A stretch of 64,000 bases of DNA from Amphiscolops sp. MND2022 (lineage: Eukaryota). A program made the translations under genes and the position numbers. Shown here piece after piece: positions 24,701 through 52,759 of this stretch. The stretch's first letter is position 1. Each line of letters begins with the position of its first letter. The stretch spans positions 14,694,001-14,758,000 of the forward strand of contig OZ076412.1 of NCBI GenBank assembly GCA_964187785.1. The letters run 5' to 3'. The notes below the pieces were generated by a model. It searched no databases. It was given only the letters and a program-made list of their open reading frames with translations, and was not told where the DNA came from.

Positions 24701-27700
24701 GCTAACTACGACAATCGTTGCGCTGGGACCTTTCTCAATTCACATTAAAATACAAATTATCTACATTTTCCAAGTTTAAAATCGCGAAAGAATTATTTGA
24801 TACACTCTTGGATAGGTCAATGATTATAATGCACATAGTCGACTTCGTACTCCTCGTTGTTCTTCATTAACTCCTCCAAACTACTGAAATGGTTATGGAA
24901 AGTGCCTAATAAAATGCTTTTGACAATTTTTCTTGCCTGGAAGATGTTCGCTGCATAGCGCTGCAAAGACCCTTGTGTTGTTCAAGTTGTGAACAAACTC
25001 CGATATTGCGGCAGCAGTTTCCGTTGGAAGAATCGGTTCGTGATATGGATTTGTTGGATAAGGCGATCGTCGTTTCCACTAACGCAGATGACAGCGGTAT
25101 TGAAATTTGCAACGTGCCGTGCGTACCACCACAGATCTTGGGACTTTAACCAAGAAATTTTGAATTCATCTCGTCTTTTCTCCACGAACGTATATGTCCG
25201 GGAATCGATGGCCCGCATCGCATCATTCGCACGTCATGACTATAATCTATTGTGCTAAACCAACTTAATAGGAATCGTCCAATGAAATGAAATGCGAATT
25301 AGAGAAACTAAAACAAACTTACTTTCCAGCACACTTCAAACGTGCAATAGCTAACGACTATCATGCTTCTTTCAATTTCATTTGTTGAATGATTTGGATG
25401 CTATTGAAAAATCCACTTGAAAAAAAGTTCAATGTAGTGTGAAAAACGTACCACTCGAGGGTAAGACCCTTTAGAAATTCTAGTACAATTCTTGGAGTAA
25501 TAGTACAATTTTCAAATACTGTTAACAAGAGCTGAATTGCGAGTATTGATTAATTGAGATTGAAATGAGTTTGTAAGAAGGAGCACGTCAAACGTGCCCA
25601 GTTGATTCCTCTTCATTTCACTTGGTACCATATCCTGCAGCGCGTTGTAGATATCACAATATAAGTTGCAAGAAAAGGAAACTTCACAAACGGCCGGACC
25701 CTTGAATACAATTCGGGTTAGTACGCTATAGCTTCATGCAAAAGTTTCCCCTAGTACACATTCTCAGTCTTTGTATTACTTGAAAAAACAGTGAGGGAAA
25801 ATCTAAAATAAAGGAATTGAAGAAACTTGAGCTAACTACGACAATCGTTGCGCCGGGACCTTTCCCAATTCACATTAAAATACAAATTATCTACAGTTTC
25901 CAAGTTTAAAATCGTGAAAGAATTGTTTGATACTCTTGGATAGGTCAATGATTATGATGCACATAGTCGACTTCGTACTCCTCGTTGTTCTTTATTAACT
26001 CCTCCAAACTACTGAAATGGTTATTGAAAGTGCCTAATAAAATGCTTTTGACCATTTTTCTTGACTCGGAGATGTTCGCTGGATGGCGCTGCAAAGACCC
26101 TTGTGTTGTTCAAGATGTGAACAAACGCTGATATTGCGGCAGCTGTTCCAATTGAACCTCGAACTTCATAAAAGCACACTTCAAACGTGCAATAACTAAC
26201 GACTATCGTGCTTCTTTCAATTTCATTTGTTGAATGATTTGAATGCTGTTAGAAAATCCACTTGAAAAGGTAGTTCAATGTAGCGTGAAAAACGTACCAC
26301 TCGAGGAAAAGACCCTTTAGAAGTTTTAGTACAATTCTTGGAGTAATAGTACAATTTTCAGGTACTGTTGACAAGAGCTGAATTCCGAGTATTGATCAAT
26401 TGAGACTGAAATGAATTTGTGAGAATGAGCACGTCAAACGTGCCCAGTTGATTCCCGATTCATTTCACTTGCTACCATATTCTGCAGCGCTTTGTAGATT
26501 TTACGATGTAAGTTGCGAGAAAAGGAAACTTGCCAAACGGCAGTACCCATGAATACAATTTAGGTTAGTACACTATAGTCTCGTGCAAAAGTTTCTCCCT
26601 AGTGCAAGTTCTTAGTTTTTGTTTTACTTGGAACAGTGAGGGAAATTCTAATATAAAGGAATTGAAGAAACTTGAGCTAACTACGACAATCGTTGCGCAG
26701 GGAGGGACCTTTCTCAATTCACATTAAATTACAAATTATATACAGTTTCCAAGTTTAAAATCGTGAAAGAGTTGTTTGATACACCCTTGGATAGGTCAAT
26801 GATTATAATGCACATCGTCGACTTCGTACTCCTCGTTGTTCTTCAATAACTTCTCCAAACAACTGAAATGGTTATTGAAAGTGCCTAATAAAATGCTTTT
26901 GACATTTTTTTCTTGATTCGAAGATGTTCGTTGGATGGTGCTGCAAAGATCCTCGTGTTGTTCAAGATGTGAACAAACGCCGATATTGCGGCAGCTGTTT
27001 CAATTGAACCTCGAACTTCATAAAAGCACACTTCAAACGTGCAATAACTAACGACTATCATGCTTCTTTCAATTTCATTTGTTGAATGATTTGGATGCTG
27101 TTAGAAAATCCACTTGAAAAGGTAGTTCAATGTAGCGTGAAAAACTTAATACTCGAGGAAAAGACCCTTTAGAAGTTTTAGTACAATTTTCGGAGTAATA
27201 GTACAATTTTCAGGTACTGTTGACAAGAGCTGAATTCCGAGTATTGATCAATTGAGACTGAAATGAATTTGTGAGAAAGAGCACGTCAAACGTGCCCAGT
27301 TGATTCCCGATTCATTTCACTTGCTACCATATCCTGCAGCGCTTTGTAGATTTTACGATGTAAGTTGTGAGAAAAGGAAACTTGCCAATTGGCAGGACCC
27401 ATGAATACAATTCGGGTTAGTACACTATAGCCTCATGCAAAAGTTTCTCCCTAGTACACATTCTCAGTTTTTGTATTACTTGAAAAAACAGTGAGGGAAA
27501 ATCTAATACACAGGGTTTGAAGAAACTTGAGCTAACTACGACAATCGTTGCGCAGGGACTTTTCTCAATTCACAATAAAATACAAATTATCTACAGTTTC
27601 CAAGTTTAAAATCGTGAAAGAATTGTTTGATACACTCTTGGATAGGTCAATGATTATGATGCACATCGTCGACTTCGTACTCTTCGTTGTTCTTTAATAA

Positions 27701-30700
27701 CTCTTCCAAACTACTGAAATGGTTATTGAAAGTTCCTAATAAAATGCTTTCGACAATTTTTCTTGACTCGAAGATGTTCGCTGGATGGCGCTGCAAAGAC
27801 CCTTGTGTTGTTGAAGTTGTGAACAAACTCCGATATTGCGGCAGCTGTTTCCGTTGGAAGAATCGGTTCGTGATATGGATTTGTTGGATAAGGCGATCGT
27901 CGTTTCCACTAACGCAGATGACAGCGGTATTGAAATCGGCAGCGTGCGCTGCGTACCACCACAAATCTTGGGCCTTCAACCAAGAAACTTTTCATCTCGT
28001 CATTTCTCCACGACCGTAGATGTCCGAGAATCGATGGCCCGCATCGCATCATTCGCACGTCATGACTAGAACCTCTTATTGTGCTAAACCAAGTTAATAG
28101 ATGGATTCGACCACTGAAATGAAATGCGAATTAGAGAAACTTTCGCCTAAGGTTGTTTACCACAATTTTGATCGTTAACAAAATAACATGATTACCTTAC
28201 GTCTTACCCCACTGTTGGTTGGCTTTTTCGATCACACAATAATCTGTAAAAAATTCCTTCGACCATCCTGTCAGTATGTAGATTTCAGTTGAAAAGAACG
28301 ATACGTCAAACGGTCACAGTTCATTGATTTTAATATTGTAGGTGATTCGAATTTTATAGAGAGAGTAATGGAAACATTACAAGAACCCTGCTCTACTACT
28401 TGGAATCAAAACAGACCAGGCATGATGCCCAAATTGAACAGGAGAACGTCACGATGATACCTTAGTTGTGAAAGTCTGTTGATTTCCGTTAATCAACATA
28501 TTTGATGTAAAATTGCAGCTAACTTCACATTCAACTTTGAAACTAAAAAAATTCTCTTCAAGTGACACTCCATGGTGACATCCTCGAAGCGTAACCTAAT
28601 GTAAGCGTAGTCCTAATGTAAACATTCAAAGAAATTATTCTGCTTTTAATTGAACCTGGAACTTCATAAAAGCACACTTCAAACGTGCAATAGCTAACGA
28701 CTATCATGCTTCTTTCAATTTCATTTGTTGAATGATTTGGATCCTAATGTAAACATTCAAAGAAATTATTCTGCTTTTAATTGAACCTCGAACTTCATAA
28801 AAGCACACTTCAAACGTGCAATAGCTAACGACTATCATGCTTCTTTCAATTTCATTTGTTGAATGATTTGGATGCTATTAGAAAACCCACTTGAAAAGGT
28901 AGTTCAATGTAGCGTGAAAAAGTTACTACTCGAGGAAAAGACCCTTTAGAAGTTTTAGTACAATTTTTGAGTAATTGTACAATTTTCAGGTACTGTTGAC
29001 AAGAGCTGAATTGCGAGTATTCATCAATTGAGACTGAAATGAATTTGTGAGAAGGAGCACGTCGAACGTGCCCAGTTGATTCCCGATTGATTTCACTTGC
29101 TACCATATCCTGCAGCGCTTTGTAGATTTTACAATGTAAGTTGCGAGAAAATGAAACTTGCCAATCGGCAGGACCCATGAATACAATTCGGGTTAGTACA
29201 CTATAGCCTCATGCAAATGTTTCTCCCTAGTACACATTCTCAGTTTTTGTATTACTTGAAAAAACAGTGAGGGAAAATCTTATATACAGGATTTGAAGAA
29301 ACTTGAGCTAACTACGACAATCGTTGCGCAGGGACCTTTCTCAATTCACATTAAAATACAAATTATCTACAGTTTCCAAGTTTAAAATCGTGAAAGAATT
29401 GTTTGATACACTCTTGGATAGGTCAATTATTATGATGCACATCGTCGACTTCGTACTCCTCGTTTTTCTTTAATAACTCCTCCAAACGATTGAAATGGTT
29501 ATTGAAAGTGCCTAATAAAATGCTTTTGACAATTTTTCTTGATTCGAAGATGTTCGCTGGATGGCGCTGCAAAGACCCTTGTTGTTCAAGTTGTGAACCA
29601 ACTCCGATATTGCGGCAGCTGTTTCCGCTGGAAGAATTGGTTCGTGATATGGATTTGTTGGATAAGGCGATCGTCGTTTCCACCAACGCAGATGACAGCA
29701 GTATTGGAATCGGCAACGTGCGCTGCGTACCATCACAGATCTTGGGACTTTAACAAAGAAATTTTTGAAGAAATCATCTCGTCTTTTCTCCTCGAACGTA
29801 TATGTCCGGGAATCGATGGCCCGCATCGCATCATTCGCACGTCATGACTATATCCTCTTATTGTGCTAAACCAAATTAATAGATGGAATCGTCCGATGAA
29901 ATTAAATGCGAATTAGAGAAACTGGAACAAACTTACTTTCCACCACACTTCAAACGTGCAATAGCTAACGACTATCATGCTTCTTCCAATTTCATTTGTT
30001 GAATGATTTGGATGCTATTGAAAAATCCACTTGAAAATATAGTTCAATGTAGCGTGAAAAACGTACTGTTCGAGGAAAAGACCCTTTAGAAATTTTAGTA
30101 CAATTCTTGGAGTAATAGTACAATTTTAAAGTACTGTTGACAAGAGCTGAATTGCGAGTCATGAATAATTGAGAGCGGAATGAAATTGTGAGAAGGAGCA
30201 CGTCAAACTTGCCCAGTTATTCTTCTTTCATTTCACTTGCTACCATATCCTGCAGCGCATTGTAGATATTACAATGTAAGTTGCAAGAAAAGGAAACTTG
30301 TCAAACGGCAGGACCCATGAATACAATTCGGGTTAGTACACTATAGCCTCATGCAAAAGTTTCTCCTTAGTACACATTCTCAGTTTTTGTATTACTCGAA
30401 ACAACAGTGAGGGAAAATCTAAAATAAAGGATTTGAAGAAACTTGAGCTAACTGCGACAATCGTTGCGCAGGAACCTTTCTCAATTCACATTAAAATACA
30501 AATTATCTAGTTTCCAAGTTTAAAATCGTGAAAGAATTGCTTGATACACTCTTGGATAGGTCAATGATTATAATGCACATCGTCGACTTCGTACTCCTCG
30601 TTGTTCTTTGATAACTCCCCCAAACTACTGAAATGGTTATTGAAAGTGCCTAATAAAATGCTTTTGACAATTTTTTTTGATTCGAAGATGTTCGCTGGAT

Positions 30701-33700
30701 GGCGTTGCAAAGACACTTGTGTTGTTCAAGTTGTGAACCAACTCTGATATTGCGGCAGTTGTTTCCGCTGGAAGAATCGGTTCGTGGTATGGATTTGTTG
30801 GATAAGGCGATCGTCGTTTCCACCAACGCAGATGACAGCAGTATTGGAATCGGCAACGTGCGCTGCGTACCACCACAGATCTTGGGATTTTAACAAAGAA
30901 ATTTTTGAAGAAATCATCCCGTCTCTTCTCCTCGAACGTATATGTCCGGGAATCGATGGCCCGCATCGCATCATTCGCACGTCATGACTATAACCTCTTA
31001 TTGTACTAAACCAAATTAGTAGATGGAATCGTCCGATGAAATTAAATGCGAATTAGAGAAACTGGAACAAACTTACTTTCCACCACACTTCAAACGTGCA
31101 ATAGCTAACGACTATCATGCTTCTTTCAATTTCAATTGTTGAATGATTTGGATGCTATTAGAAAACCCACTTGAAAAGGTAGTTCAATGTAGCGTGAAAA
31201 AGTTACTACTCGAGGAAAAGACCCTTTAGAAGTTTTAGTACAATTTTTGAGTAATTGTACAATTTTCAGGTACTGTTGACAAGAGCTGAATTGCGAGTAT
31301 TCATCAATTGAGACTGAAATGAATTTGTGAGAAGGAGCACGTCAAACGTGCCCAGTTGATTCCCGATTGATTTCACTTGCTACCATATCCTGCAGCGCTT
31401 TGTAGATTTTACAATGTAAGTTGCGAGAAAATGAAACTTGCCAATCGGCAGGACGCATGAATACAATTCGGGTTAGTACACTATAGCCTCATGCAAATGT
31501 TTCTCCCTAGTACACATTCTCAGTTTTTGTATTACTTGAAAAAACAGTGAGGGAAAATCTAATATACAGGATTTGAAGAAACTTGAGCTATCTACGACAA
31601 TCGTTGCGCAGGGACCTTTCTCAATTCACATTAAAATACAAATTATCTACAGTTTCCAAGTTAAAAATCGTGAAAGAATTGTTTGATACACTCTTGGATA
31701 GGTCAATGATTATGATGCACATCGTCGACTTCGTACTCGTTGTTCTTTGATAACTCCCCCAAACTACTGAAATGGTTATTGAAAGTGCCTAATAAAATGC
31801 TTTTGACAATTTTTTTTGATTCGAGGATGTTCGCTGGATGGCGTTGCAAAGACACTTGTGTTGTTCAAGTTGTGAACCAACTCTGATATTGCGGCAGTTG
31901 TTTCCGCTGGAAGAATCGGTTCGTGATATGGATTTGTTGGATAAGGCGATCGTCGTTTCCACTAACACAGATGACAGCAGTATTGGAATCGGCAACGTGC
32001 GCTGCGTACCACCACAGATCTTGGGACTTTAACAAAGAAATTTTTGAAGAAATCATCTCGTCTTTTCTTTTCGAACGTATATGTCCGGGAATCGATGGCC
32101 CGCATCGCATCAATCGCACGTCATGACTATAACCTCTTATTGTACTAAACCAAATTAGTAGATGGAATCGTCCGATGAAATTAAATGCGAATTAGAGAAA
32201 CTGGAACAAACTTACTTTCCACCACACTTCAAACGTGCAATAGCTAACGACTATCATGCTTCTTTCAATTTCAATTGTTGAATGATTTGGATGCTATTAG
32301 AAAACCCACTTGAAAAGGTAGTTCAATGTAGCGTGAAAAAGTTACTACTCGAGGAAAAGACTCTTTAGAAGTTTTAGTACAATTTTTGAGTAATTGTACA
32401 ATTTTCAGGTACTGTTGACAAGAGCTGAATTGCGAGTATTCATCAATTGAGACTGAAATGAATTTGTGAGAAGGAGCACGTCAAACGTCCCCAGTTGATT
32501 CCCGATTGATTTCACTTGCTACCATATCCTGCAGCGCTTTGTAGATTTTACAATGTAAGTTGCGAGAAAATGAAACTTGCCAATCGGCAGGACGCATGAA
32601 TACAATTCGGGTTAGTACACTATAGCCTCATGCAAATGTTTCTCCCTAGTACACATTCTCAATTTTTGTATTACTTGAAAAAACAGTGAGGGAAAATCTA
32701 ATATACAGGATTTGAAGAGACTTGAGCTATCTACGACAATCGTTGCGCAGGGACCTTTCTCAATTCACATTAAAATACAAATTATCTACAGTTTCCAAGT
32801 TAAAAATCGTGAAAGAATTGTTTGATACACTCTTGGATAGGTCAATGATTATGATGCACATCGTCGACTTCGTACTCCTCGTTGTTCTTTAATAACTCCT
32901 CCAAACGATTGAAATGGTTATTGAAAGTGCCTAATAAAATGCTTTTGACAATTTTTCTTGACTCGAAGATGTTCGCTGGATGGCGCTGCAAAGACCCTTG
33001 TGTTGTTCAAGTTGTGAACCAACTCCGATATTGCGGCAGCTGTTTCCGCTGGAAGAATTGGTTCGTGATATGGATTTGTTGGATAAGGCGATCGTCGTTT
33101 CCACTAACGCAGATGACAGCGGTATTGAAATCTGCAACGTGCGGTGCGTACCACCACAGATCTTGGGACTTTAACCAAGAAATTTTGAATTCATCTCGTC
33201 TTTTCTCCACGAACGTATATGTCCGGGATTCGATGGCCCGCATCGCATCATTCGCCCGTCATGACTATAATATATTGTGCTAAACCAACTTAATAGGAAT
33301 CGTCCAATGAAATGAAATGCGAATTAGAGAAACTAAAACAAACTTACTTTCCATCACACTTCAAACGTGCAATAACTAACGACTATCATGCTTCTTTCAA
33401 TTTCAATTGTTGAATGATTTGGATGCTACTAGAAAACCCACTTGAAAAGGTAGTTCAATGTAGCGTGAAAAAGGTACTACTCGAGGAAAAGACCCTTTAG
33501 AAGTTTTAGTACAATTTTTGAGTAATTGTACAATTTTCAGGTACTGTTGACAAGAGCTGAATTGCGAGTATTCATCAATTGAGACTGAAATGAATTTGTG
33601 AGAAGGAGCACGTCAAACGTGCCCAGTTGATTCCCGATTGATTTCACTTGCTACCATATCCTGCAGCGCTTTGTAGATTTCACAATGTAAGTTGCGAGAA

Positions 33701-36700
33701 AATGAAACTTGCCAATCGGCAGGACGCATGAATACAATTCGGGTTAGTACACTATAGCCTCATGCAAATGTTTCTCCCTAGTACACATTCTCAGTTTTTG
33801 TATTACTTGAAAAAACAGTGAGGGAAAATCTAATATACAGGATTTGAAGAAACTTGAGCTATCTACGACAATCGTTGCGCAGGGACCTTTCTCAATTCAC
33901 ATTAAAATACAAATTATCTACAGTTTCCAAGTTAAAAATCGTGAAAAAATTGTTTGATACACTCTTGGATAGGTCAATGATTATGATGCACATCGTCGAC
34001 TTCGTACTCCTCGTTGTTCTTTAATAACTCCTCCAAACGATTGAAATGGTTATTGAAAGTGCCTAATAAAATGCTTTTGACAATTTTTCTTGACTCGAAG
34101 ATGTTCGCTGGATGGCGCTGCAAAGACCCTTGTGTTGTTCAAGTTGTGAACCAACTCCGATATTGCGGCAGCTGTTTCCGCTGGAAGAATTGGTTCGTGA
34201 TATGGATTTGTTGGATAAGGCGATCGTCGTTTCCACCAACGCAGATGACAGCAGTATTGGAATCGGCAACGTGCGCTGCGTACCACCACAGATCTTGGGA
34301 CTTTAACCAAGAAATTTTGAATTCATCTCGTCTTTTCTCCACGAACGTATATGTCCGGGATTCGATGGCCCGCATCGCATCATTCGCACGTCATGACTAT
34401 AACCTCTTATTGTGCTAAACCAAATTAATAGATGGAATCGTCCGATGAAATTAAATGCGATTTAGAGAAACTGGAACAAACTTACTTTCCACCACACTTC
34501 AAACGTGCAATAGCTAACGACTATCATGCTTCTTCCAATTTCATTTGTTGAATGATTTGGATGCTATTGAAAAATCCACTTGAAAATATAGTTCAATGTA
34601 GCGTGAAAAACGTACTGTTCGAGGAAAAGACCCTTTAGAAATTTTAGTACAATTCTTGGAGTAATAGTACAATTTTAAAGTACTGTTGACAAGAGCTGAA
34701 TTGCGAGTCATGAATAATTAAGAGTGGAATGAAATTGTGAGAAGGAGCACGTCAAACTTGCCCAGTTATTCTTCTTTCATTTCACTTGCTACCATATCCT
34801 GCAGCGCATTGTAGATATTACAATGTAAGTTGCAAGAAAAGGAAACTTGCCAAACGGCAGGACCCATGAATACAATTCGGGTTAGTACACTATAGCCTCA
34901 TGCAAAAGTTTCTCCTTAGTACACATTCTCAGTTTTTGTATTACTCGAAACAACAGTGAGGGAAAATCTAAAATAAAGGATTTGAAGAAACTTGAGCTAA
35001 CTGCGACAATCGTTGCGCAGGAACCTTTCTCAATTCACAATAAAATACAAATTATCTAGTTTCCAAGTTTAAAATCGTGAAAGAATTGTTTGATACACTC
35101 TTGGATAGGTCAATGATTATGATGCACATCGTCGACTTCGTACTCCTCGTTGTTCTTTAATAACTCCTCCAAACGATTGAAATGGTTATTGAAAGTGCCT
35201 AATAAAATGCTTTTGACAATTTTTCTTGACTCGAAGATGTTCGCTGGATGGCGCTGCAAAGACCCTTGTGTTGTTCAAGTTGTGAACCAACTCCGATATT
35301 GCGGCAGCTGTTTCCGCTGGAAGAATTGGTTCGTGATATGGATTTGTTGGATAAGGCGATCGTCGTTTCCACCAACATAGATGACAGCAGTATTGGAATC
35401 GGCAACGTGCGCTGCGTACCACCACAGATCTTGGGACTTTAACAAAGAAATTTTTGAAGAAATCATCTCGTCTTTTCTCCTCGAACGTATATGTCCGGGA
35501 ATCGATGGCCCGCATCGCATCATTCGCACGTCATGACTATAACCTCTTATTGTGCTAAACCAAATTAATAGATGGAATCGTCCGATGAAATTAAATGCGA
35601 ATTAGAGAAACTGGAACAAACTTACTTTCCACCACACTTCAAATGTGCAATAGCTAATGACTATCATGCTTCTTCCAATTTCATTTGTTGAATGATTTGG
35701 ATGCTATTGAAAAATCCACTTGAAAATATAGTTCAATGTAGCGTGAAAAACGTACTGTTCGAGGAAAAGACCCTTTAGAAATTTTAGTACAATTCTTGGA
35801 GTAATAGTACAATTTTAAAGTACTGTTGACAAGAGCTGAATTGCGAGTCATGAATAATTGAGAGCGGAATGAAATTGTGAGAAGGAGCACGTCAAACGTG
35901 CCCAGTTATTCTTCTTTCATTTCACTTGCTACCATATCCTGCAGCGCATTGTAGATATTACAATGTAAGTTGCAAGAAAAGGAAACTTGCCAAACGGCAG
36001 GACCCATGAATACATTTCGGGTTAGTACACTATAGCCTCATGCAAAAGTTTCTCCTTAGTACACATTCTCAGTTTTTGTATTATTCGAAACAACAGTGAG
36101 GGAAAATCTAAAATAAAGGATTTGAAGAAACTTGAGCTAACTGCGACAATCGTTGCGCAGGAACCTTTCTCAATTCACATTAAAATACAAATTATCTAGT
36201 TTCCAAGTTTAAAATCGTGAAAGAATTGCTTGATACACTCTTGGATAGGTCAATGATTATAATGCACATCGTCGACTTCGTACTCGTTGTTCTTTGATAA
36301 CTCCCCCAAACTACTGAAATGGTTATTGAAAGTGCCTAATAAAATGCTTTTGACAATTTTTTTTTGATTCGAGGATGTTCGCTGGATGGCGTTGCAAAAA
36401 CACTTGTGTTGTTCAAGTTGTGAACCAACTCTGATATTGCGGCAGTTGTTTCCGCTGGAAGAATCGGTTCGTGATATGGATTTGTTGGATAAGGCGATCG
36501 TCGTTTCCACCAACACAGATGACAGCAGTATTGGAATCGGCAACGTGCGCTGCGTACCACCACAGATCTTGGGACTTTAACAAAGAAATTTTTGAAGAAA
36601 TCATCTCGTCTTTTCTCCTCGAACGTATATGTCCGGGAATCGATGGCCCGCATCGCATCATTCGCACGTCATGACTATAACCTCTTATTGTACTAAACCA

Positions 36701-39700: not shown

Positions 39701-42700
39701 CATTAACTCCTCCAAACTACTGAAATGGTTATTGAAAGTGCCTAATAAAATGCTTTTGACAATTTTTCTTGACTCGAAGATGTTCGCTGGATGGCGCTGC
39801 AAAGACCCTTGTGTTGTTCAAGTTGTAAACAAACTCCGATGTTGCGGCAGCTGTTTCCGTTGGAAGAATCGGTTCGTGATATGGATTTGTTGGATAAGGC
39901 GATCGTCGTTTCCACTAACGCAGATGACAGCGGTATTGAAATCTGCAACGTGCGGTGCGTACCACCACAGATCTTGGGACTTTAACCAAGAAATTTTGAA
40001 TTCATCTCGTCTTTTCTCCACGAACGTATATGTCCGGGAATCGATGGCCCGCATCGCATCATTCGCACGTCATGACTATAATCTATTGTGCTAAACCAAC
40101 TTAATAGGAATCGTCCAATGAAATGAAATGCGAATTAGAGAAACTAAAACAAACTTACTTTCCAGCACACTTCAAACGTGCAATAGCTAACGACTATCAT
40201 GCTTCTTTCAATTTCATTTGTTGAATGATTTGGATGCTATTGAAAAATCCACTTGAAAAAAGTTCAATGTAGCGTGAAAAACGTACCACTCGAGGAAAAG
40301 ACCCTTTAGAAATTCTAGTACAATTCTTGGAGTAATAGTACAATTTTCAAGTACTGTTGACAAGAGCTGAATTGCGAGTATTGATCAATTGAGAGTGAAA
40401 TGAATTTGTAAGAAGGAGCACGTCAAACGTGCTCAGTTGATTCCTCTTCATTTCACTTGGTACCATATCCTGCAGCGTGTTGTAGATATTACAATATAAG
40501 TTGCAAGAAAAGGAAACTTCCCTAACGGCCGGACCCATGAATACAATTCGGGTTAGTACACTATAGCTTCATGCAAAAGTTTCTCCCTAGTACACATTCT
40601 CAGTCTTTGTATTACTTGAAAAAACAGTGAGGGAAAATCTAAAATAAAGGATTTAAAGAAACTTGAGCTAACTACGACAATCGTTGCGCAGGGACCTTTC
40701 TCAATTCACATTAAAATACAAATTATCTACATTCTCCAAGTTTAAAATCGTGAAAGAATTAATTGATACACTCTTGGATAGGTCAATGATTATAATGCAC
40801 GTAGTCGACTTCGTCTTCCTCGTTGTTCTTCATTAACTCCTCCAAACTACTGAAATGGTTATTGAAAGTGCCTAATAAAATGCTTTTGACAATTTTTCTT
40901 GACTCGAAGATGTTCGCTGGATGGCGCTGCAAAGACCCTTGTTGTTCAAGTTGTAAACAAACTCCGATGTTGCGGCAGCTGTTTCCGTTGGAAGAATCGG
41001 TTCGTGATATGGATTTGTTGGATAAGGCGATCGTCGTTTCCACTAACGCAGATGACAGCGGTATTGAAATCTGCAACGTGCGGTGCGTACCACCACAGAT
41101 TTTGGGACTTTAACCAAGAAATTTTGAATTCATCTCGTCTTTTCTCCACGAACGTCTATGTCCGGGAATCGATGGCCCGCATCGCATCATTCGCACGTCA
41201 TGACTATAATCTATTGTGCTAAACCAACCTAATAGGAATCGTCCAATGAAATGAAATGCGAATTAGAGAAACTGAAACAAACTTACTTTCCAGCACACTT
41301 CAAACGTGCAATAGCTAACGACTATCATGCTTCTTTCAATTTCATTTGTTGAATGATTTGGATGCTATTGAAAAATCCACTTGAAAAAAGTTCAATGTAG
41401 CGTGAAAAACGTACCACTCGAGGAAAAGACCCTTTAGAAATTCTAGTACAATTCTTGGAGTAATAGTACAATTTTCAAGTACTGTTGACAAGAGCTGAAT
41501 TGCGAGTATTGAATAATTGAGAGTGAAATGAATTTGTAAGAAGGAGCACGTCAGACGTGCCCAGTTGATTCCTATTCATTTCACTTGGTACCATATCCTG
41601 CAGCGCGTTGTAGATATTACAATATAAGTTGCAAGAAAAGGGAACTTCCCAAACGGCCGGACCCATGAATACAATTCGGGTTAGTACACTATAGCTTCAT
41701 GCAAAAGTTTCTCCCTAGTACACTTTCTCAGTCTTTGTATTACTTGAAAAAACTGAGGTAAAATCTAATATAAAGGAATTGAAGAAGCTTGAGCTAACTA
41801 CGACAATCGTTGCGCAGGAACCTTTCTCAATTCACATTAAAATACAAATTATCTACATTTTCCAAGTTTAAAATCGTGAAAGAATTATTTGGTACACTCT
41901 CGGATAGGTCAATGATTATAATGCACATAGTCGACTTCGTACTCCTCGTTGTTCTTTATTAACTCCTCCAAACTACTGAAATGGTTATTGAAAATGCCTA
42001 GTAAAATGCTTTTGACCGTTTTTCTTGACTCGAAGATGTTCGCTGGATAGCGCTGCAAAGACCCTTGTGTTGTTCGAGTTGTGAACAAACTCCGATATTG
42101 CGGCAGCTGTTTCCGTTGGAAGAATCGGTTCGTGATATGGATTTGTTGGATAAGGCGATCGTCGTTTCCACTAACGCAGATGACAGCGGTATTGAAATCT
42201 GCAACGTGCGGTGCGTACCACCACAGATCTTGGGACTTTAACCAAGAAATTTTGAATTCATCTCGTCTTTTCTCCACGAACGTATATGTCCGGGATTCGA
42301 TGGCCCGCATCGCATCATTCGCCCGTCATGACTATAATATATTGTGCTAAACCAACTTAATAGGAATCGTCCAATGAAATGAAATGCGAATTAGAGAAAC
42401 TAAAACAGACTTACTTTCCATCACACTTCAAACGTGCAATAACTAACGACTATCATGCTTCCTTCAATTTCATTTGTTGAATGATTTGGATGCTATTGAA
42501 AAATCCACTTGAAAGAAAGTTCAATGTAGCGTGAAAAACGTACCACTCTAGCATAAGACCCTTTAGAAATTCTAGTACAATTCTTGGAGTAATAGTACAA
42601 TTTTCGAGTACTGTTGACAAGAGCTGAATTGCGAGTATTGATTAATTGAGATTGAAATGAATTTGTAAGAAGGAGCACGTCAAACGTGCTCAGTTGATTC

Positions 42701-45700
42701 CTCTTCATTTCACTTGGTACCATATCCTGCAGCGCGTTGTAGATATCACAATATAAGTTGCAAGAAAAGGAAACTTCACAAACGGCCGGATCCATGAATA
42801 CAATTCGGGTTAGTACAATATAGCTTCATGCAAAAGTTTCTCCCTAGTACACATTCTAGTCTTTGTATTACTTGAAAAACAGTGAGGAAAAATCTAATAT
42901 AAAGGAATTGAAGAAACTTGAGCTAACTACGACAATCGTTGCGCTGGGACCTTTCTCAATTCACATTAAAATACAAATTATCTACATTTTCCAAGTTTAA
43001 AATCGCGAAAGAATTATTTGATACACTCTTGGATAGGTCAATGATTATAATGCACATAGTCGACTTCGTACTCCTCGTTGTTCTTCATTAACTCCTCCAA
43101 ACTACTGAAATGGTTATGGAAAGTGCCTAATAAAATGCTTTTGACAATTTTTCTTGACTGGAAGATGTTCGCTGCATGGCGCTGCAAAGACCCTTGTGTT
43201 GTTCAAGTTGTGAACAAACTCCGATATTGCGGCAGCTGTTTCCGTTGGAAGAATCGGTTCGAGATATGGATTTGTTGGATAAGGCGATCGTCGTTTCCAC
43301 TAACGCAGATGACAGCGGTATTGAAATTTGCAACGTGCCGTGCGTACCACCACAGATCTTGGGACTTTAACCAAGAATTTTTGAATTCATCTCGTCTTTT
43401 CTCCACGAACGTATATGTCCGGGAATCGATGGCCCGCATCGCATCATTCCCCCGTCATGACTATAATCTATTGTGCTAAACCAACTTAATAGGAATCGTC
43501 CAATGAAATGAAATGCGAATTAGAGAAACTAAAATAAACCAACTTAATAGGAATCGTCCAATGAAATGAAATGCGAATTAGAGAAACTAAAACAAACTTA
43601 CTTTCCAGCACACTTCAAACGTGCAATAGCTAACGACTATCATGCTTCTTTCAATTTCATTTGTTGAATGATTTGGATGCTATTGAAAAATCCACTTGAA
43701 AAAAAGTTCAATGTAGTGTGAAAAACGTACCACTCGAGGGTAAGACCCTTTAGAAATTCTAGTACAATTCTTGGAGTAATAGTACAATTTTCAAATACTG
43801 TTAACAAGAGCTGAATTGCGAGTATTGATTAATTGAGATTGAAATGAATTTGTAAGAAGGAGCACGTCAAACGTGCCCAGTTGATTCCTCTTCATTTCAC
43901 TTGGTACCATATCCTGCAGCGCGTTGTAGATATCACAATATAAGTTGCAAGAAAAGGAAACTTCACAAACGGCCGGACCCATGAATACAATTCGGGTTAG
44001 TACAATATAGCTTCATGCAAAAGTTTCTCCCTAGTACACATTCTAGTCTTTGTATTACTTGAAAAAACAGTGAGGGAAAATCTAAAATAAAGGAGTTGAA
44101 GAAACTTGAGCTAACTACGACAATCGTTGCACAGGGACCTTTCTCAATTCACATTAAAATACAAATTATCTACATTTTCCAAGTTTAAAATCGCGAAAGA
44201 ATTATTTGATACACTCTTGGATAGGTCAATGATTATAATGCACATAGTCGACTTCGTACTCCTCGTTGTTCTTCATTAACTCCTCCAAACTACTGAAATG
44301 GTTATGGAAAGTGCCTAATAAAATGCTTTTGACAATTTTTCTTGACTGGAAGATGTTCGCTGCATGGCGCTGCAAAGACCCTTGTGTTGTTCAAGTTGTG
44401 AACAAACTCCGATATTGCGGCCGCAGTTTCCGTTGGAAGAATCGGTTCGTGATATGGATTTGTTGGATAAGGCGATCGTCGTTTCCACTAACGCAGATGA
44501 CAGCGGTATTGAAATTTGCAACGTGCCGTGCGTACCACCACAGATCTTGGGACTTTAACCAAGAAATTTTGAATTCATCTCGTCTTTTCTCCACGAACGT
44601 ATATGTCCGGGAATCGATGGCCCGCATCGCATCATTCGCACGTCATGACTATAATCTATTGTGCTAAACCAACTTAATAGGAATCGTCAAATGAAATGAA
44701 ATGCGAATTAGAGAAACTAAAACAAACTTACTTTCCAGCACACTTCAAACGTGCAATAGCTAACGACTATCATGCTTCTTTCAATTTCATTTGTTGAATG
44801 ATTTGGATGCTATTGAAAAATCCACTTGAAAAAAAGTTCAATGTAGTGTGAAAAACGTACCACTCGAGGATAAGACCCTTTAGAAATTCTAGTACAATTC
44901 TTGGAGTAATAGTACAATTTTCAAATACTGTTAACAAGAGCTGAATTGCGAGTATTGATTAATTGAGATTGAAATGAATTTGTAAGAAGGAGCACGTCAA
45001 ACGTGCTCAGTTGATTCCTCTTCATTTCACTTGGTACCATATCCTGCAGCGCGTTGTAGATATCACAATATAAGTTGCAAGAAAAGGAAACTTCACAAAC
45101 GGCCGGACCCATGAATACAATTCGGGTTAGTACAATATAGCTTCATGCAAAAGTTTCTCCCTAGTACACATTCTAGTCTTTGTATTACTTGAAAAAACAG
45201 TGAGGGAAAATCTAATATAAAGGAATTGAAGAAACTTGAGCTAACTACGACAATCGTTGCGCTGGGACCTTTCTCAATTCACATTAAAATACAAATTATC
45301 TACATTTTCGAAGTTTAAAATCGCGAAAGAATTATTTGATACACTCTTGGATAGGTCAATGATTATAATGCACATAGTCGACTTCGTACTCCTCGTTGTT
45401 CTTCATTAACTCCTCCAAACTACTGAAATGGTTATGGAAAGTGCCTAATAAAATGCTTTTGACAGTTTTTCTTGACTGGAAGATGTTCGCTGCATAGCGC
45501 TGCAAAGACCCTTGTGTTGTTCAAGTTGTGAACAAACTCCGATATTGCGGCAGCAGTTTCCGTTGGAAGAATCGGTTCGTGATATGGATTTGTTGGATAA
45601 GGCGATCGTCGTTTCCACTAACGCAGATGACAGCGGTATTGAAATTTGCAACGTGCCGTGCGTACCACCACAGATCTTGGGACTTTAACCAAGAAATTTT

Positions 45701-48700
45701 GAATTCATCTCGTCTTTTCTCCACGAACGTATATGTCCGGGAATCGATGGCCCGCATCGCATCATTCGCACGTCATGACTATAATCTATTGTGCTAAACC
45801 AACTTAGTAGGAATCGTCCAATGAAATGAAATGCGAATTAGAGAAACTAAAACAAACTTACTTTCCAGCACACTTCAAACGTGCAATAGCTAACGACTAT
45901 CATGCTTCTTTCAATTTCATTTGTTGAATGATTTGGATGTTATTGAAAAATCCATTTGGAAATAGTTCAATGTAGCGTGAAAAACGTACCACTCGAGGAA
46001 AAGACCCTTTAGAAATTCTAGTACAATTCTTGGAGTAATAGTACAATTTTCAAGTACTGTTGACAAGAGCTGAATTGCGAGTATTGATTGAGAGTGAAAT
46101 GAATTTGTAAGAAGGAGCACGTCAAACATGCCCAGTTGATTCCTCTTCATTTCACTTGGTACCATATCCTGCAGCGCGTTGTAGATATTACAATGTAAGT
46201 TGCAAGGAAACTTCCCAAACGGCCGGACCCATGAATACAATTCGGGTTAGTACAATATAGCTTCATGCAAAAGTTTCTCCCTAGTACTCATTCTCAGTCT
46301 TTGTATTACTTGAAAAAACAGTGAGGGAAAATCTAATATAAAGGAATTGAAGAAGCTTGAGCTAACTACGACAATCGTTGCGCAGGGACCTTTCTCAATT
46401 CACATTAAAATACAAATTATCTACATTTTCCAAGTTTAAAATCGTGAAAGAATTATTTGGTACACTCTCGGATAGGTCAATGGTTATAATGCACATAGTC
46501 GACTTCGTACTCCTCGTTGTTCTTTAATAACTACTCCAAACTACTGAAATGGTTATTGAAAGTGCCTAATAAAATGCTTTTGACCATTTTTCTTGACTCG
46601 AAAATGTTCGCTGGATGGCGCTGCAAAGACCCTTGTGTTGTTCAAGTTGTGAACAATCTCCGATATTGCGGCAGCTGTTTCCGTTGGAAGAATCGGTTCG
46701 TGATATGGATTTGTTGCATAAGGCGATCGTCGTTTCCACTAACGCAGATGACAGCGGTATTGAAATTTGCAACGTGCCGTGCGTACCACCACAGATCTTG
46801 GGACTTTAACCAAGAAATTTTGAATTCATCTCGTCTTTTCTCCACGAACGTATATGTCCGGGAATCGATGGCCCGCATCGCATCATTCGCACGTCATGAC
46901 TATAATCTATTGTGCTAAACCAACTCAATAGGAATCGTCCAATGAAATGAAATGCGAATTAGAGAAACTAAAACAAACTTACTTTCCACCACACTTCAAA
47001 CGTGCAATAGCTAACGACTATCATGCTTCTTTCAATTTCATTTGTTGAATGATTTGGATGCTATTGAAAAATCCACTTGAAAAAAAGTTCAATGTAGTGT
47101 GAAAAACGTACCACTCGAGGGTAAGACCCTTTAGAAATTCTAGTACAATTCTTGGAGTAATAGTACAATTTTCAAATACTGTTAACAAGAGCTGAATTGC
47201 GAGTATTGATTAATTGAGATTGAAATGAATTTGTAAGAAGGAGCACGTCAAACGTGCCCAGTTGATTCCTCTTCATTTCACTTGGTACCATATCCTGCAG
47301 CGCGTTGTAGATATCACAATATAAGTTGCAAGAAAAGGAAACTTCACAAACGGCCGGACCCATGAATACAATTCGGGTTAGTACAATATAGCTTCATGCA
47401 AAAGTTTCTCCCTAGTACACATTCTAGTCTTTGTATTACTTGAAAAAACAGTGAGGGAAAATCTAATATAAAGGAATTGAAGAAACTTGAGCTAACTACG
47501 ACAATCGCTGCGCTGGGACCTTTCTCAATTCACATTAAAATACAAATTATCTACATTTTCGAAGTTTAAAATCGCGAAAGAATTATTTGATACACTCTTG
47601 GATAGGTCAATGATTATAATGCACATAGTCGACTTCGTACTCCTCGTTGTTCTTCATTAACTCCTCCAAACTACTGAAATGGTTATGGAAAGTGCCTAAT
47701 AAAATGCTTTTGACAGTTTTTCTTGACTGGAAGATGTTCGCTGCATAGCGCTGCAAAGACCCTTGTGTTGTTCAAGTTGTGAACAAACTCCGATATTGCG
47801 GCAGCAGTTTCCGTTGGAAGAATCGGTTCGTGATATGGATTTGTTGGATAAGGCGATCGTCGTTTCCACTAACGCAGATGACAGCGGTATTGAAATTTGC
47901 AACGTGCCGTGCGTACCACCACAGAGCTTGGGACTTTAACCAAGAAATTTTGAATTCATCTCGTCTTTTCTCCACGAACGTATATGTCCGGGAATCGATG
48001 GCCCGCATCGCATCATTCGCACGTCATGACTATAATCTATTGTGCTAAACCAACTTAGTAGGAATCGTCCAATGAAATAAAATGCGAATTAGAGAAACTA
48101 AAACAAACTTACTTTCCAGCACACTTCAAACGTGCAATAGCTAACGACTATCATGCTTCTTTCAATTTCATTTGTTGAATGATTTGGATGTTATTGAAAA
48201 ATCCATTTGGAAAAAGTTCAATGTAGCGTGAAAAACGTACCACTCGAGGAAAAGACCCTTTAGAAATTCTAGTACAATTCTTGGAGTAATAGTACAATTT
48301 TCAAGTACTGTTGACAAGAGCTGAATTGCGAGTATTGATTGAGAGTGAAATGAATTTATAAGAAGGAGCACGTCAAACATGCCCAGTTGATTCCTCTTCA
48401 TTTCACTTGGTACCATATCCTGCAGCGCGTTGTAGATTTTACAATGTAAGTTGCAAGGAAACTTCCCAAACGGCCGGACCCATGAATACAATTCGGGTTA
48501 GTACAATATAGCTTCATGCAAAAGTTTCTCCCTAGTACTCATTCTCAGTCTTTGTATTACTTGAAAAAACAGTGAGGGAAAATCTAATATAAAGGAATTG
48601 AAGAAGCTTGAGCTAACTACGACAATCGTTGCGCAGGGACCTTTCTCAATTCACATTAAAATACAAATTATCTACATTTTCCAAGTTTAAAATCGTGAAA

Positions 48701-50258
48701 GAATTATTTGGTACACTCTCGGATAGGTCAATGGTTATAATGCACATAGTCGACTTCGTACTCCTCGTTGTTCTTTAATAACTACTCCAAACTACTGAAA
48801 TGGTTATTGAAAGTGCCTAATAAAATGCTTTTGACCATTTTTCTTGACTCGAAAATGTTCGCTGGATGGCGCTGCAAAGACCCTTGTGTTGTTCAAGTTG
48901 TGAACAATCTCCGATATTGCGGCAGCTGTTTCCGTTGGAAGAATCGGTTCGTGATATGGATTTGTTGGATAAGGCGATCGTCGTTTCCACTAACGCAGAT
49001 GACAGCGGTATTGAAATTTGCAACGTGCCGTGCGTACCACCACAGATCTTGGGACTTTAACCAAGAATTTTTGAATTCATCTCGTCTTTTCTCCACGAAC
49101 GTATATGTCCGGGAATCGATGGCCCGCATCGCATCATTCCCCCGTCATGACTATAATCTATTGTGCTAAACCAACTTAATAGGAATCGTCCAATGAAATG
49201 AAATGCGAATTAGAGAAACTAAAACAAACTTACTTTCCAGCACACTTCAAACGTGCAATAGCTAACGACTATCATGCTTCTTTCAATTTCATTTGTTGAA
49301 TGATTTGGATGCTATTGAAAAATCCACTTGAAAAAAAGTTCAATGTAGTGTGAAAAACGTACCACTCGAGGGTAAGACCCTTTAGAAATTCTAGTACAAT
49401 TCTTGGAGTAATAGTACAATTTTCAAATACTGTTAACAAGAGCTGAATTGCGAGTATTGATTAATTGAGATTGAAATGAATTTGTAAGAAGGAGCACGTC
49501 AAACGTGCCCAGTTGATTCCTCTTCATTTCACTTGGTACCATATCCTGCAGCGCGTTGTAGATATCACAATATAAGTTGCAAGAAAAGGAAACTTCACAA
49601 ACGGCCGGACCCATGAATACAATTCGGGTTAGTACAATATAGCTTCATGCAAAAGGTTCTCCCTAGTACATATTCTAATCTTTGTATTACTTGAAAAAAC
49701 AGTGAGGGAAAATCTAATATAAAGGAATTGAAGAAACTTGAGCTAACTACGACAATCGTTGCGCAGAGACCTTTCTCAATTCACATTAAAATACAAATTA
49801 TCTACATTTTCCAAGTTTAAAATCGTGAAAGAATTATTTGTTACACTCTTGGATAGGTCAATGATTATAATGCACATAGTCGACTTCGTACTCCTCGTTG
49901 TTCTTTATTAACTCCTCCAAACTACTGAAATGGTTATCGAAAGTGCCTAATAAAATGCTTTTGACAATTTTTCTTGACTCGAAGATGTTCGCTGGATGGC
50001 GCTGCAAAGACCCTTGTGTTGTTCAAGTTGTGAATAAACTCCGATATTGCGGCAGTTGTTTCCGCTGGAAGAATCGGTTCGTGATATGGATTTTTTGGAT
50101 AAGGCGATCGTCGTTTCCACCAACGCAGATGACAGCGGTATTGAAATCGACAACGTGCGCTGCGTACCACCACAAATCTTGGGCCTTTAACCGAGAAACT
50201 TTTCATCTCGTCATTTCTCCACGAACGTAGAAGTCCCAGAATCGATGGCCCGCATCGC
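21709..50258. repeat. Tandem array (macrosatellite-like), ~25 units: mostly 1121-1142 bp, with ~1.64-kb long and ~0.85-kb short variants at the left end
   Basis: The anchor CACTTCAAACGTGC recurs about 25 times (22117, 23751, 25332, 26177, 27029, 28675 ... 49243), and near-identical ORFs recur at about 1.13-kb spacing in the ORF track. Confidence 0.97.
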
Positions 50259-52510: not shown

Positions 52511-52759
52511 AGCGAAACGTCATTTGAAATGAAGTGGAAGACGTTTTTGTCATCAAATAACGACCATTTCCCGCTCTGTTCGGTGTTTTAATTCAACCTA
52601 AGTGTGCATCGCGGTGTTATTCGAGAATCCCTGCAGAATAGAGCTGAACGCGGGCGCTTTCTTACCAATTCTTTGCATGTAAAACAATAGAAACTATACT
52701 CTTTGTGCCTTGGTAACTTTTAGAATAGTTTATTTTGGCTCAAAACGTCATTTTTGAAC

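What the first reader, a model, noticed from the sequence alone, without database searches (positions are those of the whole stretch)
25250..49250. Every short-unit junction is a minus-strand 68-71 bp GT-AG intron-like segment: a chain of ~20 repeated antisense exons
Seen: the plus-strand junction ...TTGTG|CTAAACCAA...AAACTTAC|TTTCCA reads on the minus strand as GGAAA|GTAAGTTT ... TTGGTTTAG|CACAA. It is 68 bp at 40091-40158 and 71 bp at 29866-29936, the same size class as the 77-bp host UPF1 intron. Long units add a 36-nt minus-strand micro-exon (23294-23329, tttttcag...GTAAGA; frame xYCVIEKANQQW). Inference: an antisense transcript could splice these ~1.06-kb blocks into a long repetitive RNA full of premature stops, that is an NMD substrate, or a dsRNA/piRNA source, made from within the UPF1 gene and able to interfere with UPF1 transcription.
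Basis: partly seen in the sequence, partly recalled or inferred. Interest (0 to 1): 0.7.

Follow-up and report, generated by a model that had tools for sequence, protein, structure and literature searches.

The report
Fossil intron in amplified transposon pseudogene
The repeated 68-71-base "intron-like" pieces are real but ordinary: they are the leftover intron of a small esterase-like gene carried by a Helitron-type jumping gene. A promoterless, already dead piece of that gene was copied head-to-tail about 25 times inside an intron of UPF1, and nothing shows the copies are transcribed or spliced today.

Summary
Nineteen units carry a complete minus-strand GTAAGT...TTTAG segment (11 of 68 nt, 7 of 71 nt, 1 of 126 nt), spaced 1.12-1.14 kb apart. 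The array runs 21.7-52.5 kb and lies antisense in a 40.9-kb UPF1 intron.

Origin. The segment is homologous along its whole length to the 72-nt intron of an intact two-exon gene elsewhere in the genome (C4:77.16 Mb and C1:71.60 Mb). That gene encodes an SGNH/GDSL-hydrolase-fold protein and sits about 1.7 kb upstream of a 2378-aa Helitron Rep/PIF1-helicase ORF. Window 16.4-53.1 kb is an old, partly deleted copy of that element, colinear with it at 67-80% identity, in which the gene segment was amplified in place.

State of the copies. Each short unit keeps about 9 nt of exon 1, the intron, exon 2 and the 3' flank. It lacks the promoter region and the start codon. GDS has become DYS, and five frameshifts are shared by 18-19 of the 19 units.

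Selection. GT and AG are invariant in 19/19, but 81% of gap-free columns are invariant too (P about 0.43). Intron and ORF diversity are equal.

RNA. No RNA run was available, so antisense splicing is untested. The scan had already noted this stretch (s1-191904) and a similar dead-esterase array beside a Helitron elsewhere (s1-151700).

The parts
12650..13006 (+). UPF1 helicase exon (ends ...GNPKVLSK), followed by donor GT at 13007
   Evidence: PDB UPF1 E 2e-55; Pfam AAA_12; sequence
13007..53875 (+). UPF1 intron of about 40.9 kb that holds the whole transposon remnant and array
53876..54418 (+). next UPF1 exon (QPLWNQLLHHFKESKVLVEG...)
   Evidence: translation; ORF
16429..17213 (-). 3' part of the Helitron-like element (76% identical to L041 16-814)
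17677..21203 (-). decayed N-terminal about 1322 codons of the Rep/helicase ORF plus the spacer towards the esterase-like gene; the helicase part is deleted
   Evidence: tblastn E to 2e-104 and blastn 80% to L041; the intact ORF has Pfam Helitron_like_N + PIF1
21709..52511 (-). tandem array of about 25 units derived from the SGNH/GDSL-like gene segment: long units of about 1.6 kb at both edges and at 28.1 kb, short units of 1.12-1.14 kb from 25255 to 50297, and composite end units at 50289-52511
52742..53148 (-). 5' part of the element (75% identical to L001 2951-3376)
25255..25322 (-). fossil intron, 68 nt, GT..AG
29866..29936 (-). fossil intron, 71 nt
31006..31076 (-). fossil intron, 71 nt
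32145..32215 (-). fossil intron, 71 nt
33280..33347 (-). fossil intron, 68 nt
34415..34485 (-). fossil intron, 71 nt
35555..35625 (-). fossil intron, 71 nt
36693..36763 (-). fossil intron, 71 nt
37826..37893 (-). fossil intron, 68 nt
38958..39028 (-). fossil intron, 71 nt
   Evidence: DNA contigs keep it
41219..41286 (-). fossil intron, 68 nt
42347..42414 (-). fossil intron, 68 nt
43476..43601 (-). fossil intron, 126 nt (internal 58-nt duplication)
44664..44731 (-). fossil intron, 68 nt
45794..45861 (-). fossil intron, 68 nt
46915..46982 (-). fossil intron, 68 nt
48045..48112 (-). fossil intron, 68 nt
49166..49233 (-). fossil intron, 68 nt
41909..42310 (-). the only 133-codon open remnant of exon 2 (frameshifted relative to the intact paralogue); in other units it is broken into pieces of 83-114 codons
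23170..23236 (-). acceptor-side intron remnant of a long unit; the break lies inside the intron and there is no donor. Similar remnants start at 28084, 50298 and 51424
50791..51037 (-). remnant of the gene's upstream region (L001 2519-2778 equivalent), fused directly to an ORF fragment; a second copy lies at 51918-52164. The 180 nt that hold proximal upstream DNA, exon 1, the intron and the GDS block are missing

Best explanation
The 68-71-nt GT-AG segments are the fossil intron of a small two-exon SGNH/GDSL-hydrolase-like gene. That gene rides at the 5' side of a Helitron-type (Rep + PIF1 helicase) transposon. An old copy of this transposon inserted antisense into a UPF1 intron and now spans window 16.4-53.1 kb. 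Its gene segment had already lost function and was then amplified in place, most likely by unequal crossing-over or replication slippage. The amplification went in steps: about 1.6-kb units broken inside the intron, then a 1.13-kb unit, then blocks of two or more units. The 1.13-kb unit runs from the second base of the start codon to about 570 nt past the stop codon. Every unit therefore carries about 9 nt of exon 1, the whole intron, exon 2 and 3' flank, but no promoter, 5' UTR or start codon. The splice signals are intact because they are young copies of one ancestral sequence, not because they are maintained. Shown here: homology, gene structure, fold, transposon context, shared lesions and lack of constraint. 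Inferred: the amplification mechanism and the absence of present function.
For: Parent gene. The intact paralogue (L001, minus strand) reads ATG GCT GAT AA | GTAAGT...TTTAG (72 nt) | C ACA ATT ATA ATC GGT GAC AGT CAT. Only splicing puts a start codon in frame with the GDS block, because a TGA lies 5 codons upstream in the unspliced frame. The same structure is kept in the second copy L002 and in another assembly at 97% identity (L039).

Homology of the intron. The array consensus aligns with the paralogue from exon 1 through intron, exon 2 and about 400 nt of 3' flank. Identity is uniform: intron 76.5%, exon 2 75.5%, flank 78.8%.

SGNH fold. The family alignment A1 shows blocks GDSH, GxSG, GGND and DxVH. 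A PDB profile search hits GDSL proteins at E 5e-6. The AlphaFold model has pLDDT 88, and the listed Foldseek PDB hits are SGNH/GDSL-type esterases, acylhydrolases and related acyltransferases. Distant paralogues pass the Pfam PF00657 cut-off.

Transposon context. A 2378-aa ORF with Helitron_like_N and PIF1 lies about 1.7 kb downstream of the paralogue gene. Its remnant lies at window 17677-21143, and the window is colinear with L001 1-3376 from 20947 to 53148.

Pseudogene state. The start codon is gone, GDS is DYS, and indels of +5, -1, -4, -4 and -1 are shared by 18-19 of 19 units.

No constraint. Variable sites by codon position are 24/27/35 (p 0.36). Diversity (pi) is 0.048 in both intron and ORF. 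GT and AG are invariant, but so are 81% of gap-free columns (P 0.43).

Amplification in place. The unit occurs nowhere else in the 1.07-Gb genome at array-like identity; the nearest copies are 74% and 70% identical. Two-unit blocks are duplicated at 99-99.6% identity. The tandem joint is seen in contigs of four DNA runs.
Against: No RNA data could be examined, so present-day transcription and splicing are neither shown nor excluded. The 12-14-nt runs of perfect identity at both splice sites between array and paralogue are somewhat longer than the 75% background predicts. This is expected from past selection in a once-functional gene but would also fit continued use. Splicing of the paralogue's intron is inferred from reading-frame logic, not seen in RNA. 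Transposon termini were not mapped, and the Helitron versus Helentron subtype is open.
Confidence: 0.85

Rival explanations
1. One reading: a minus-strand transcript runs through the array, the 68-71-nt introns are spliced out, and the resulting repetitive RNA acts on UPF1 or NMD as an NMD substrate, a dsRNA or piRNA source, or by transcriptional interference.
For: All 19 segments keep a strong donor (AAA|GTAAGT) and an acceptor (TTTAG|C). The units lack their own start and promoter, so only read-through RNA is conceivable. The minus strand of the 28-kb array has only 3 AATAAA and 12 ATTAAA, so read-through would not be stopped often. Remnants of the gene's upstream region lie at the right (5') end.
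Against: No run on record as RNA holds the stretch. The upstream remnants are rearranged and lack the 180 nt around exon 1. The splice sites are not better conserved than the rest of the unit.
Confidence: 0.05
2. By-product transcription: the array is transcribed at a low level on the minus strand, for example from the transposon's 5' remnant or a cryptic promoter. The fossil introns are spliced because they are still competent, but with no consequence for UPF1.
For: The same splice-competence and poly(A)-signal arguments. Pervasive low-level transcription of intronic repeats is common (general knowledge).
Against: There is no RNA evidence either way.
Confidence: 0.2
3. A working tandem gene family: each unit is a functional esterase-like gene.
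For: One unit has an open 133-codon frame (41909-42310). Other clusters of this family with open frames exist at C6:18.5 Mb.
Against: There is no start codon or promoter in the unit, and the Gly and Asp of the GDS block are replaced (DYS). Five frameshifts are shared by nearly all units, and there is no codon-position bias on either strand.
Confidence: 0.01
4. Assembly artefact: the array is a mis-assembled or over-expanded repeat.
For: Long tandem repeats are error-prone in assemblies, and copy number was not checked independently.
Against: Contigs from four DNA runs show the head-to-tail joint and several unit variants that match the assembled ones. The units differ by 0.4-9% in an ordered, block-wise pattern. 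These runs come from one sample, which may be the assembly's own.
Confidence: 0.02

Closest known systems
[quoted passage not shown] 2014, PMC4021074)
   Same: An intron-containing SGNH-hydrolase gene lies just 5' of a Helitron coding region and is multiplied with it. The proteins resemble CR1 esterases and PAF acetylhydrolases; PAF-AH chains are also among the PDB hits here.
   Different: Platyfish teximY genes have up to 15 exons and are expressed in testis. Here the gene has two exons and about 168 codons, and the copies in the window are dead and amplified as an internal tandem array. That paper found no such association outside fish. The organism here is not named, and orthology to texim was not tested.
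Central tandem repeats of non-autonomous Helentrons (Cg_HINE) in the Pacific oyster (Vojvoda Zeljko et al. 2020, PMC7492417)
   Same: A tandem array sits inside a Helitron-superfamily element between conserved flanks, and such elements are scattered in gene-rich DNA.
   Different: Those arrays are satellite-like repeats that spread with the element. Here the monomer is a 1.13-kb piece of a protein gene with its intron, and the array is unique to this insertion.
Esterase (SGNH) domain of ORF1 proteins of CR1-type non-LTR retrotransposons (Schneider et al. 2013, PMC3905857)
   Same: The same fold serves as an accessory protein of mobile elements.
   Different: That is a domain of a retrotransposon ORF1 without introns. 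Here it is a stand-alone spliced gene beside a rolling-circle transposase.
Gene-bearing macrosatellites such as D4Z4/DUX4 or RS447/USP17 in human (from general knowledge, not checked here)
   Same: Kilobase-sized head-to-tail units are derived from a gene, with block-wise homogenisation.
   Different: Those units keep an intact ORF and, in part, their own promoters. These units are promoterless and frameshifted.

Membership tests
Spliceosomal GT-AG intron | GT...AG ends with extended donor and acceptor consensus, and a length typical for the genome | tested here: met
   GTAAGT and TTTAG are present in 19/19 segments of 68, 71 or 126 nt. The size class of host introns was not surveyed.
Spliceosomal GT-AG intron | Descent from, or identity with, an intron of a gene whose reading frame requires its removal | tested here: met
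   The segment is homologous end to end with the 72-nt intron of the intact paralogue. There the ATG-bearing exon 1 joins the GDS block only after splicing.
Spliceosomal GT-AG intron | Removal from RNA (junction reads) | not testable with these tools
   No RNA run holds the stretch. The four runs laid are DNA contigs that keep the segment.
Spliceosomal GT-AG intron | Splice sites conserved above the neutral level among copies | tested here: not met
   81% of gap-free columns are invariant, giving P 0.43 for four invariant columns. Intron pi 0.048 equals ORF pi 0.048.
SGNH/GDSL hydrolase (parent gene) | Four blocks with Ser (GDS), Gly, Asn (GxND) and His (DxxH), and the SGNH fold | tested here: met
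   For the intact paralogue: alignment A1, PDB profile E 5e-6, model pLDDT 88 with SGNH/GDSL-type esterases, acylhydrolases and related acyltransferases among the listed Foldseek hits. The paralogue's own Pfam score is below cut-off (E 0.033), but paralogues L031 and L036 pass PF00657.
SGNH/GDSL hydrolase (array copies) | Intact reading frame with the catalytic block I | tested here: not met
   GDS has become DYS, there is no ATG, and five shared frameshifts are present.
Helitron-superfamily transposon | Rep (HUH) domain fused to a PIF1-type helicase | tested here: met
   The intact element has a 2378-aa ORF with Helitron_like_N (E 3.8e-8) and PIF1 (E 2.5e-6), both above cut-off. The window holds only the N-terminal remnant; the helicase part is deleted.
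Helitron-superfamily transposon | Characteristic termini (5' TC / 3' CTRR with hairpin, or Helentron-type ends) and target site | not tested
   The ends of the element were not mapped.
Helentron subtype | AP-endonuclease domain C-terminal to the helicase | tested here: not met
   The Pfam scan of the C-terminal 565 aa gave no Exo_endo_phos hit, only a sub-threshold GIY-YIG hit (E 3.8e-4, 21.1 bits against a 22.6 cut-off).
Natural antisense or long non-coding RNA gene | Evidence of a transcript and a promoter | not testable with these tools
   No RNA runs are available. The parental upstream DNA is present only in rearranged form at 50791-51037 and 51918-52164.

The most novel reading that the evidence does not exclude
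The promoterless array is read through on the minus strand from the transposon's 5' remnant. Its 19 competent introns are spliced, and the stop-rich multi-junction RNA (or dsRNA formed with UPF1 pre-mRNA) feeds back on UPF1 expression or NMD capacity. This would be a transposon-derived antisense regulator sitting inside the NMD helicase gene itself.
Probability: 0.04. Interest if true: 0.7.

Novelty: new member of a known kind. Interest (0 to 1): 0.25.

Why it matters
The finding removes an attractive but unsupported story, an NMD-related antisense RNA inside UPF1, and replaces it with a documented origin. It shows that a regular series of perfect splice signals can arise simply by tandem copying of one intron. 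Such series should be counted as one event.

There is modest positive value. It is a clean example of a gene-derived macrosatellite born inside a Helitron-type element. It also adds an SGNH-gene/Helitron association like the fish texim case in a genome whose nearest look-alike protein clusters are from annelids, molluscs and cnidarians (a weak indication only).

The expansion made one UPF1 intron about 30 kb longer and filled it, on the UPF1 sense strand, with poly(A)-signal hexamers. That could matter for UPF1 expression but was not tested.

Tried and rejected
1. My first model was that each unit is a complete gene copy with its own promoter and that the unit phase is arbitrary. I rejected it. 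Homology to the paralogue stops at the second base of the start codon, and the DNA upstream of every donor is the neighbour's 3' flank.

2. Coding on the plus strand. A 133-codon frame is open in 9 of the 19 short units. There is no codon-position bias (20/24/27, p 0.59) and no Pfam hit; it is simply the antisense of the old ORF.

3. TRF missed the array because its longest period is 500.

4. A single-sequence AlphaFold model was useless (pLDDT 38). The model built with the family alignment worked.

5. The word-based protein search found only one near-identical protein. The Pfam score of the paralogue itself is sub-threshold.

6. RNA test. The look-up of sequencing runs returned four runs of one sample with no RNA on record. 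Laid on 1121 letters they behave as genomic DNA, with no joint that skips the segment. This is uninformative about RNA.

7. Raw translation of the 'called gene' in L039 gave no Pfam hit. The continuous 2378-aa ORF from the window's own genome did.

8. A spliced protein model (exon 1 + exon 2 joined) was not built or searched.

9. The organism was not identified.
Full report

Yes. A BLAST of one unit against the window shows a head-to-tail array from about 22.1 to 50.3 kb, with related variants out to 21.7 and 52.5 kb. Regular units are 1121-1140 bp long, with one of 1188 bp.

Motif searches find the acceptor side in 23 places. On the plus strand this is ...TATTGTG|CTAAACC, which reads TTTAG|CACAAT on the minus strand. 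The donor side is found in 19 places. On the plus strand this is AAACTTAC|TTTCC, which reads GGAAA|GTAAGT on the minus strand.

Pairing the two sides gives 19 complete segments: 11 of 68 nt, 7 of 71 nt and one of 126 nt. The 126-nt copy carries a 58-nt internal duplication.

The array lies in a UPF1 intron that runs from 13007 to 53875 on the plus strand. The flanking exons are unmistakably UPF1 (PDB E 2e-55; Pfam UPF1_1B, AAA_11 and AAA_12).

Contigs from four DNA runs of one sample keep the 68-nt segment and contain the head-to-tail joint. The tandem structure is therefore not only a product of the assembly.

**2. What is the unit?**

The minus strand of each unit carries a decayed ORF. A genome-wide search found two nearly identical intact relatives, at C4:77.16 Mb (L001) and C1:71.60 Mb (L002). 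They are 74% identical in DNA to the unit.

Reading L001 on its minus strand shows an 11-nt coding exon 1 (ATG GCT GAT AA), a 72-nt intron (GTAAGT...TTTGGTTTAG) and then exon 2. Exon 2 begins C ACA ATT ATA ATC GGT GAC AGT CAT, which translates as ...TIIIGDSHV.

In the unspliced frame a TGA lies five codons upstream of this block, and there is no ATG in between. The catalytic GDS block can therefore be translated only after splicing.

The protein has an SGNH/GDSL hydrolase fold:
- An alignment with ten relatives (nine paralogues from the same genome plus the near-identical P0001 from another assembly) shows the four blocks GDSH, GxSG, GGND and DxVH.
- The alignment profile hits GDSL proteins in the PDB at E 5e-6 to 3e-4.
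- The AlphaFold model built with that alignment has pLDDT 88.
- The listed Foldseek PDB hits are SGNH/GDSL-type esterases, acylhydrolases and related acyltransferases, with probability 1.00 and TM 0.6-0.75.
- More distant paralogues pass the Pfam Lipase_GDSL cut-off.
- The feature-based Atlas search agrees.

I searched exon 2 alone by reference. The joined two-exon model was not built.

**3. The intron-like segment is that gene's intron.**

The array consensus aligns with the paralogue continuously through three parts:
- the last 8-9 nt of exon 1;
- the whole intron, including a 14-nt identical run at the donor and a 12-nt identical run at the acceptor;
- exon 2 and about 400 nt of 3' flank.

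Identity is flat across these parts: intron 76.5%, exon 2 75.5%, flank 78.8%.

**4. The copies are dead and promoterless.**

Relative to the intact gene, the array consensus has several lesions:
- no ATG;
- DYS in place of GDS;
- in-frame indels;
- frameshifts of +5, -1, -4, -4 and -1.

All five frameshifts are present in 18-19 of the 19 units. The gene was therefore already broken before the short unit multiplied.

Variable sites among units are spread evenly over codon positions (24/27/35, p 0.36). The same holds for the open plus-strand frame (p 0.59).

Differences between array and paralogue show a mild third-position excess (30/30/53, p 0.012). This is expected if the paralogue lineage, or the common ancestor, was under selection.

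The DNA immediately upstream of every donor is the 3' flank of the neighbouring unit. The short-unit junction falls between ...GAAGTG and TGCTGGAAA|GT, at the second base of the former start codon. Long units (about 1.6 kb) have their junction inside the intron and keep only the acceptor side.

The gene's upstream region (L001 2519-2778) survives only in two composite units at the right end, at 50791-51037 and 51918-52164. There it is fused directly to an ORF fragment. The 180 nt containing proximal upstream DNA, exon 1, the intron and the GDS block are missing.

My first idea, that each unit is a whole gene and that the 'junction' is an arbitrary phase, was therefore wrong.

**5. The context is a Helitron-type transposon.**

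A continuous 2378-aa ORF starts about 1.7 kb past the gene's stop. It carries Pfam Helitron_like_N and PIF1, both above cut-off.

The two intact copies are 99-100% identical over the stretches compared. This fits recent transposition.

In the window, several pieces match the intact element:

| Window region | Strand | Matches |
|---|---|---|
| 17677-21143 | minus | first about 1322 codons of the Rep/helicase ORF, with stops (tblastn to 2e-104) |
| 16429-17213 | minus | the element's 3' part |
| 20947-53148 | minus | colinear with L001 1-3376 |

Window 16.4-53.1 kb is thus one old copy of the same element family, 67-80% identical and with the helicase part deleted. It was inserted antisense in the UPF1 intron, and its gene segment was then expanded.

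The unit occurs nowhere else in the 1.07-Gb genome at array-like identity. The expansion therefore happened in place.

The identity matrix shows two subfamilies, one with 71-nt and one with 68-nt introns. Blocks of two units are duplicated at 99-99.6% identity, the pattern expected from unequal exchange.

**6. Are the splice sites maintained?**

GT and AG are invariant in 19/19. However, 81% of gap-free columns are invariant, so four invariant columns are expected with P about 0.43. Nucleotide diversity of the intron equals that of the ORF, at 0.048. The intron tolerates a 3-nt indel and a 58-nt duplication.

Within the array there is no sign of selection on splicing.

The long identical runs at both splice sites between array and paralogue fit past function of the intron in a live gene.

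**7. Is it transcribed or spliced now?**

This could not be tested. Laid on 1121 letters, within the operators' limit, they behave as genomic DNA.

The 19 sites remain splice-competent by sequence. The minus strand of the array has few poly(A) hexamers: 3 AATAAA and 12 ATTAAA in 28 kb.

I put low-level by-product transcription at about 0.2. I put a regulatory effect on UPF1 or NMD at about 0.04-0.05.

**8. The 'micro-exon'.**

The 36-nt string at 23294-23329 with AG and GT flanks exists. It recurs in the five long-type copies, with the donor changed to GC in one of them.

It lies in DNA derived from the spacer between the esterase-like gene and the Rep/helicase ORF (L001 846-1368 equivalent). 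The intact element has GG at that donor position. There is no evidence that it is an exon.

**9. Comparison with known cases.**

- **texim genes of fish.** This is the closest published parallel. They are SGNH-hydrolase genes with introns lying just 5' of Helitron coding regions and multiplied with them (PMC4021074). That paper found no such association outside fish.
- **Helentron central repeats in the oyster.** Tandem arrays inside Helitron-superfamily elements are known as the central repeats of non-autonomous Helentrons (PMC7492417). Those monomers are satellite-like and spread with the element.
- **Retrotransposon esterases.** SGNH esterases are also ORF1 domains of CR1-type retrotransposons (PMC3905857).
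- **Earlier notes of this scan.** These report another array of a dead esterase gene beside a Helitron (s1-151700), and the same fold as a first gene of LINE, BEL/Pao and Gypsy elements in this genome (s1-175663, s1-183073). I did not recheck those loci.

**10. Verdict.**

The feature is a new member of a known kind, a transposon-derived, gene-fragment macrosatellite. Its regular GT-AG segments are inherited copies of one fossil intron. Interest is low to moderate.

Noticed in passing
L041 2803-9939 (minus) = G000:C4:77154802-77161938: An intact 2378-aa Rep/PIF1-helicase ORF of a Helitron-type element. Its C-terminal 565 aa give a sub-threshold GIY-YIG nuclease hit (E 3.8e-4, 21.1 bits against a 22.6 cut-off) and no AP-endonuclease hit. 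A GIY-YIG domain would be unusual for this superfamily.
   Followed up: partly
L001 2818-3881; e.g. G000:C13:2573679-2642028: The DNA upstream of the intact esterase-like gene is a high-copy repeat, with at least 40 copies at 97-99% identity. It forms long arrays with a period of about 3.07 kb on C13, C1, C8, C3, C6 and C7. The window holds a 75%-identical piece at 52742-53148. These may be arrays of non-autonomous derivatives of the same element.
   Followed up: no
window 22000-50400, plus strand: On the UPF1 sense strand the array carries 36 AATAAA and 29 ATTAAA hexamers, against 3 and 12 on the minus strand. The expanded intron thus presents many potential premature poly(A) signals to UPF1 pre-mRNA.
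   Followed up: no
G000:C6:18514101-18533245 (L009-L012, L024, L025): A second tandem cluster of the same gene family, with a 2.1-4 kb period and open frames of 129-193 codons, about 50% identical to the intact paralogue. Block I reads DDSH or DNSH instead of GDSH, and the homologous donor position is TT instead of GT.
   Followed up: partly
G000:C9:53799840-53810339: A further cluster of decayed copies of the family, with stop codons and a spacing of 0.8-1.7 kb.
   Followed up: no
window 23849-24762 and 28611-28877: Secondary internal duplications within array units: 455 bp x2 at 89% matches and 131 bp x2 at 98% matches (TRF).
   Followed up: no
window 14069-14422 (minus) and 14987-15280 (plus): Two ORF-like stretches on opposite strands share the motif GGPFG(V/I)F...K..GGPF. 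This probably marks inverted copies of another repeat in the same UPF1 intron. There is also a 22-bp x6.7 tandem repeat at 16031-16178.
   Followed up: no
L028, L030, L035 (C12:48.73 Mb, C8:40.82 Mb, C9:38.52 Mb): A more distant subfamily of the esterase-like genes shows GTAAGT about 60 nt upstream of a TTTTCAG acceptor placed just before ...SSN(I/V)(H/Q)WYP. That is a short intron at or inside block I, so the intron position may be old in the family.
   Followed up: no
L039 (ENA ERZ25074608, contig ctg185643_113x_l, 114538-122999): Another public assembly holds the intact gene plus element at 97% identity, with the same ATG-exon, intron and GDS exon. The encoded protein P0001 is 95% identical.
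   Followed up: partly
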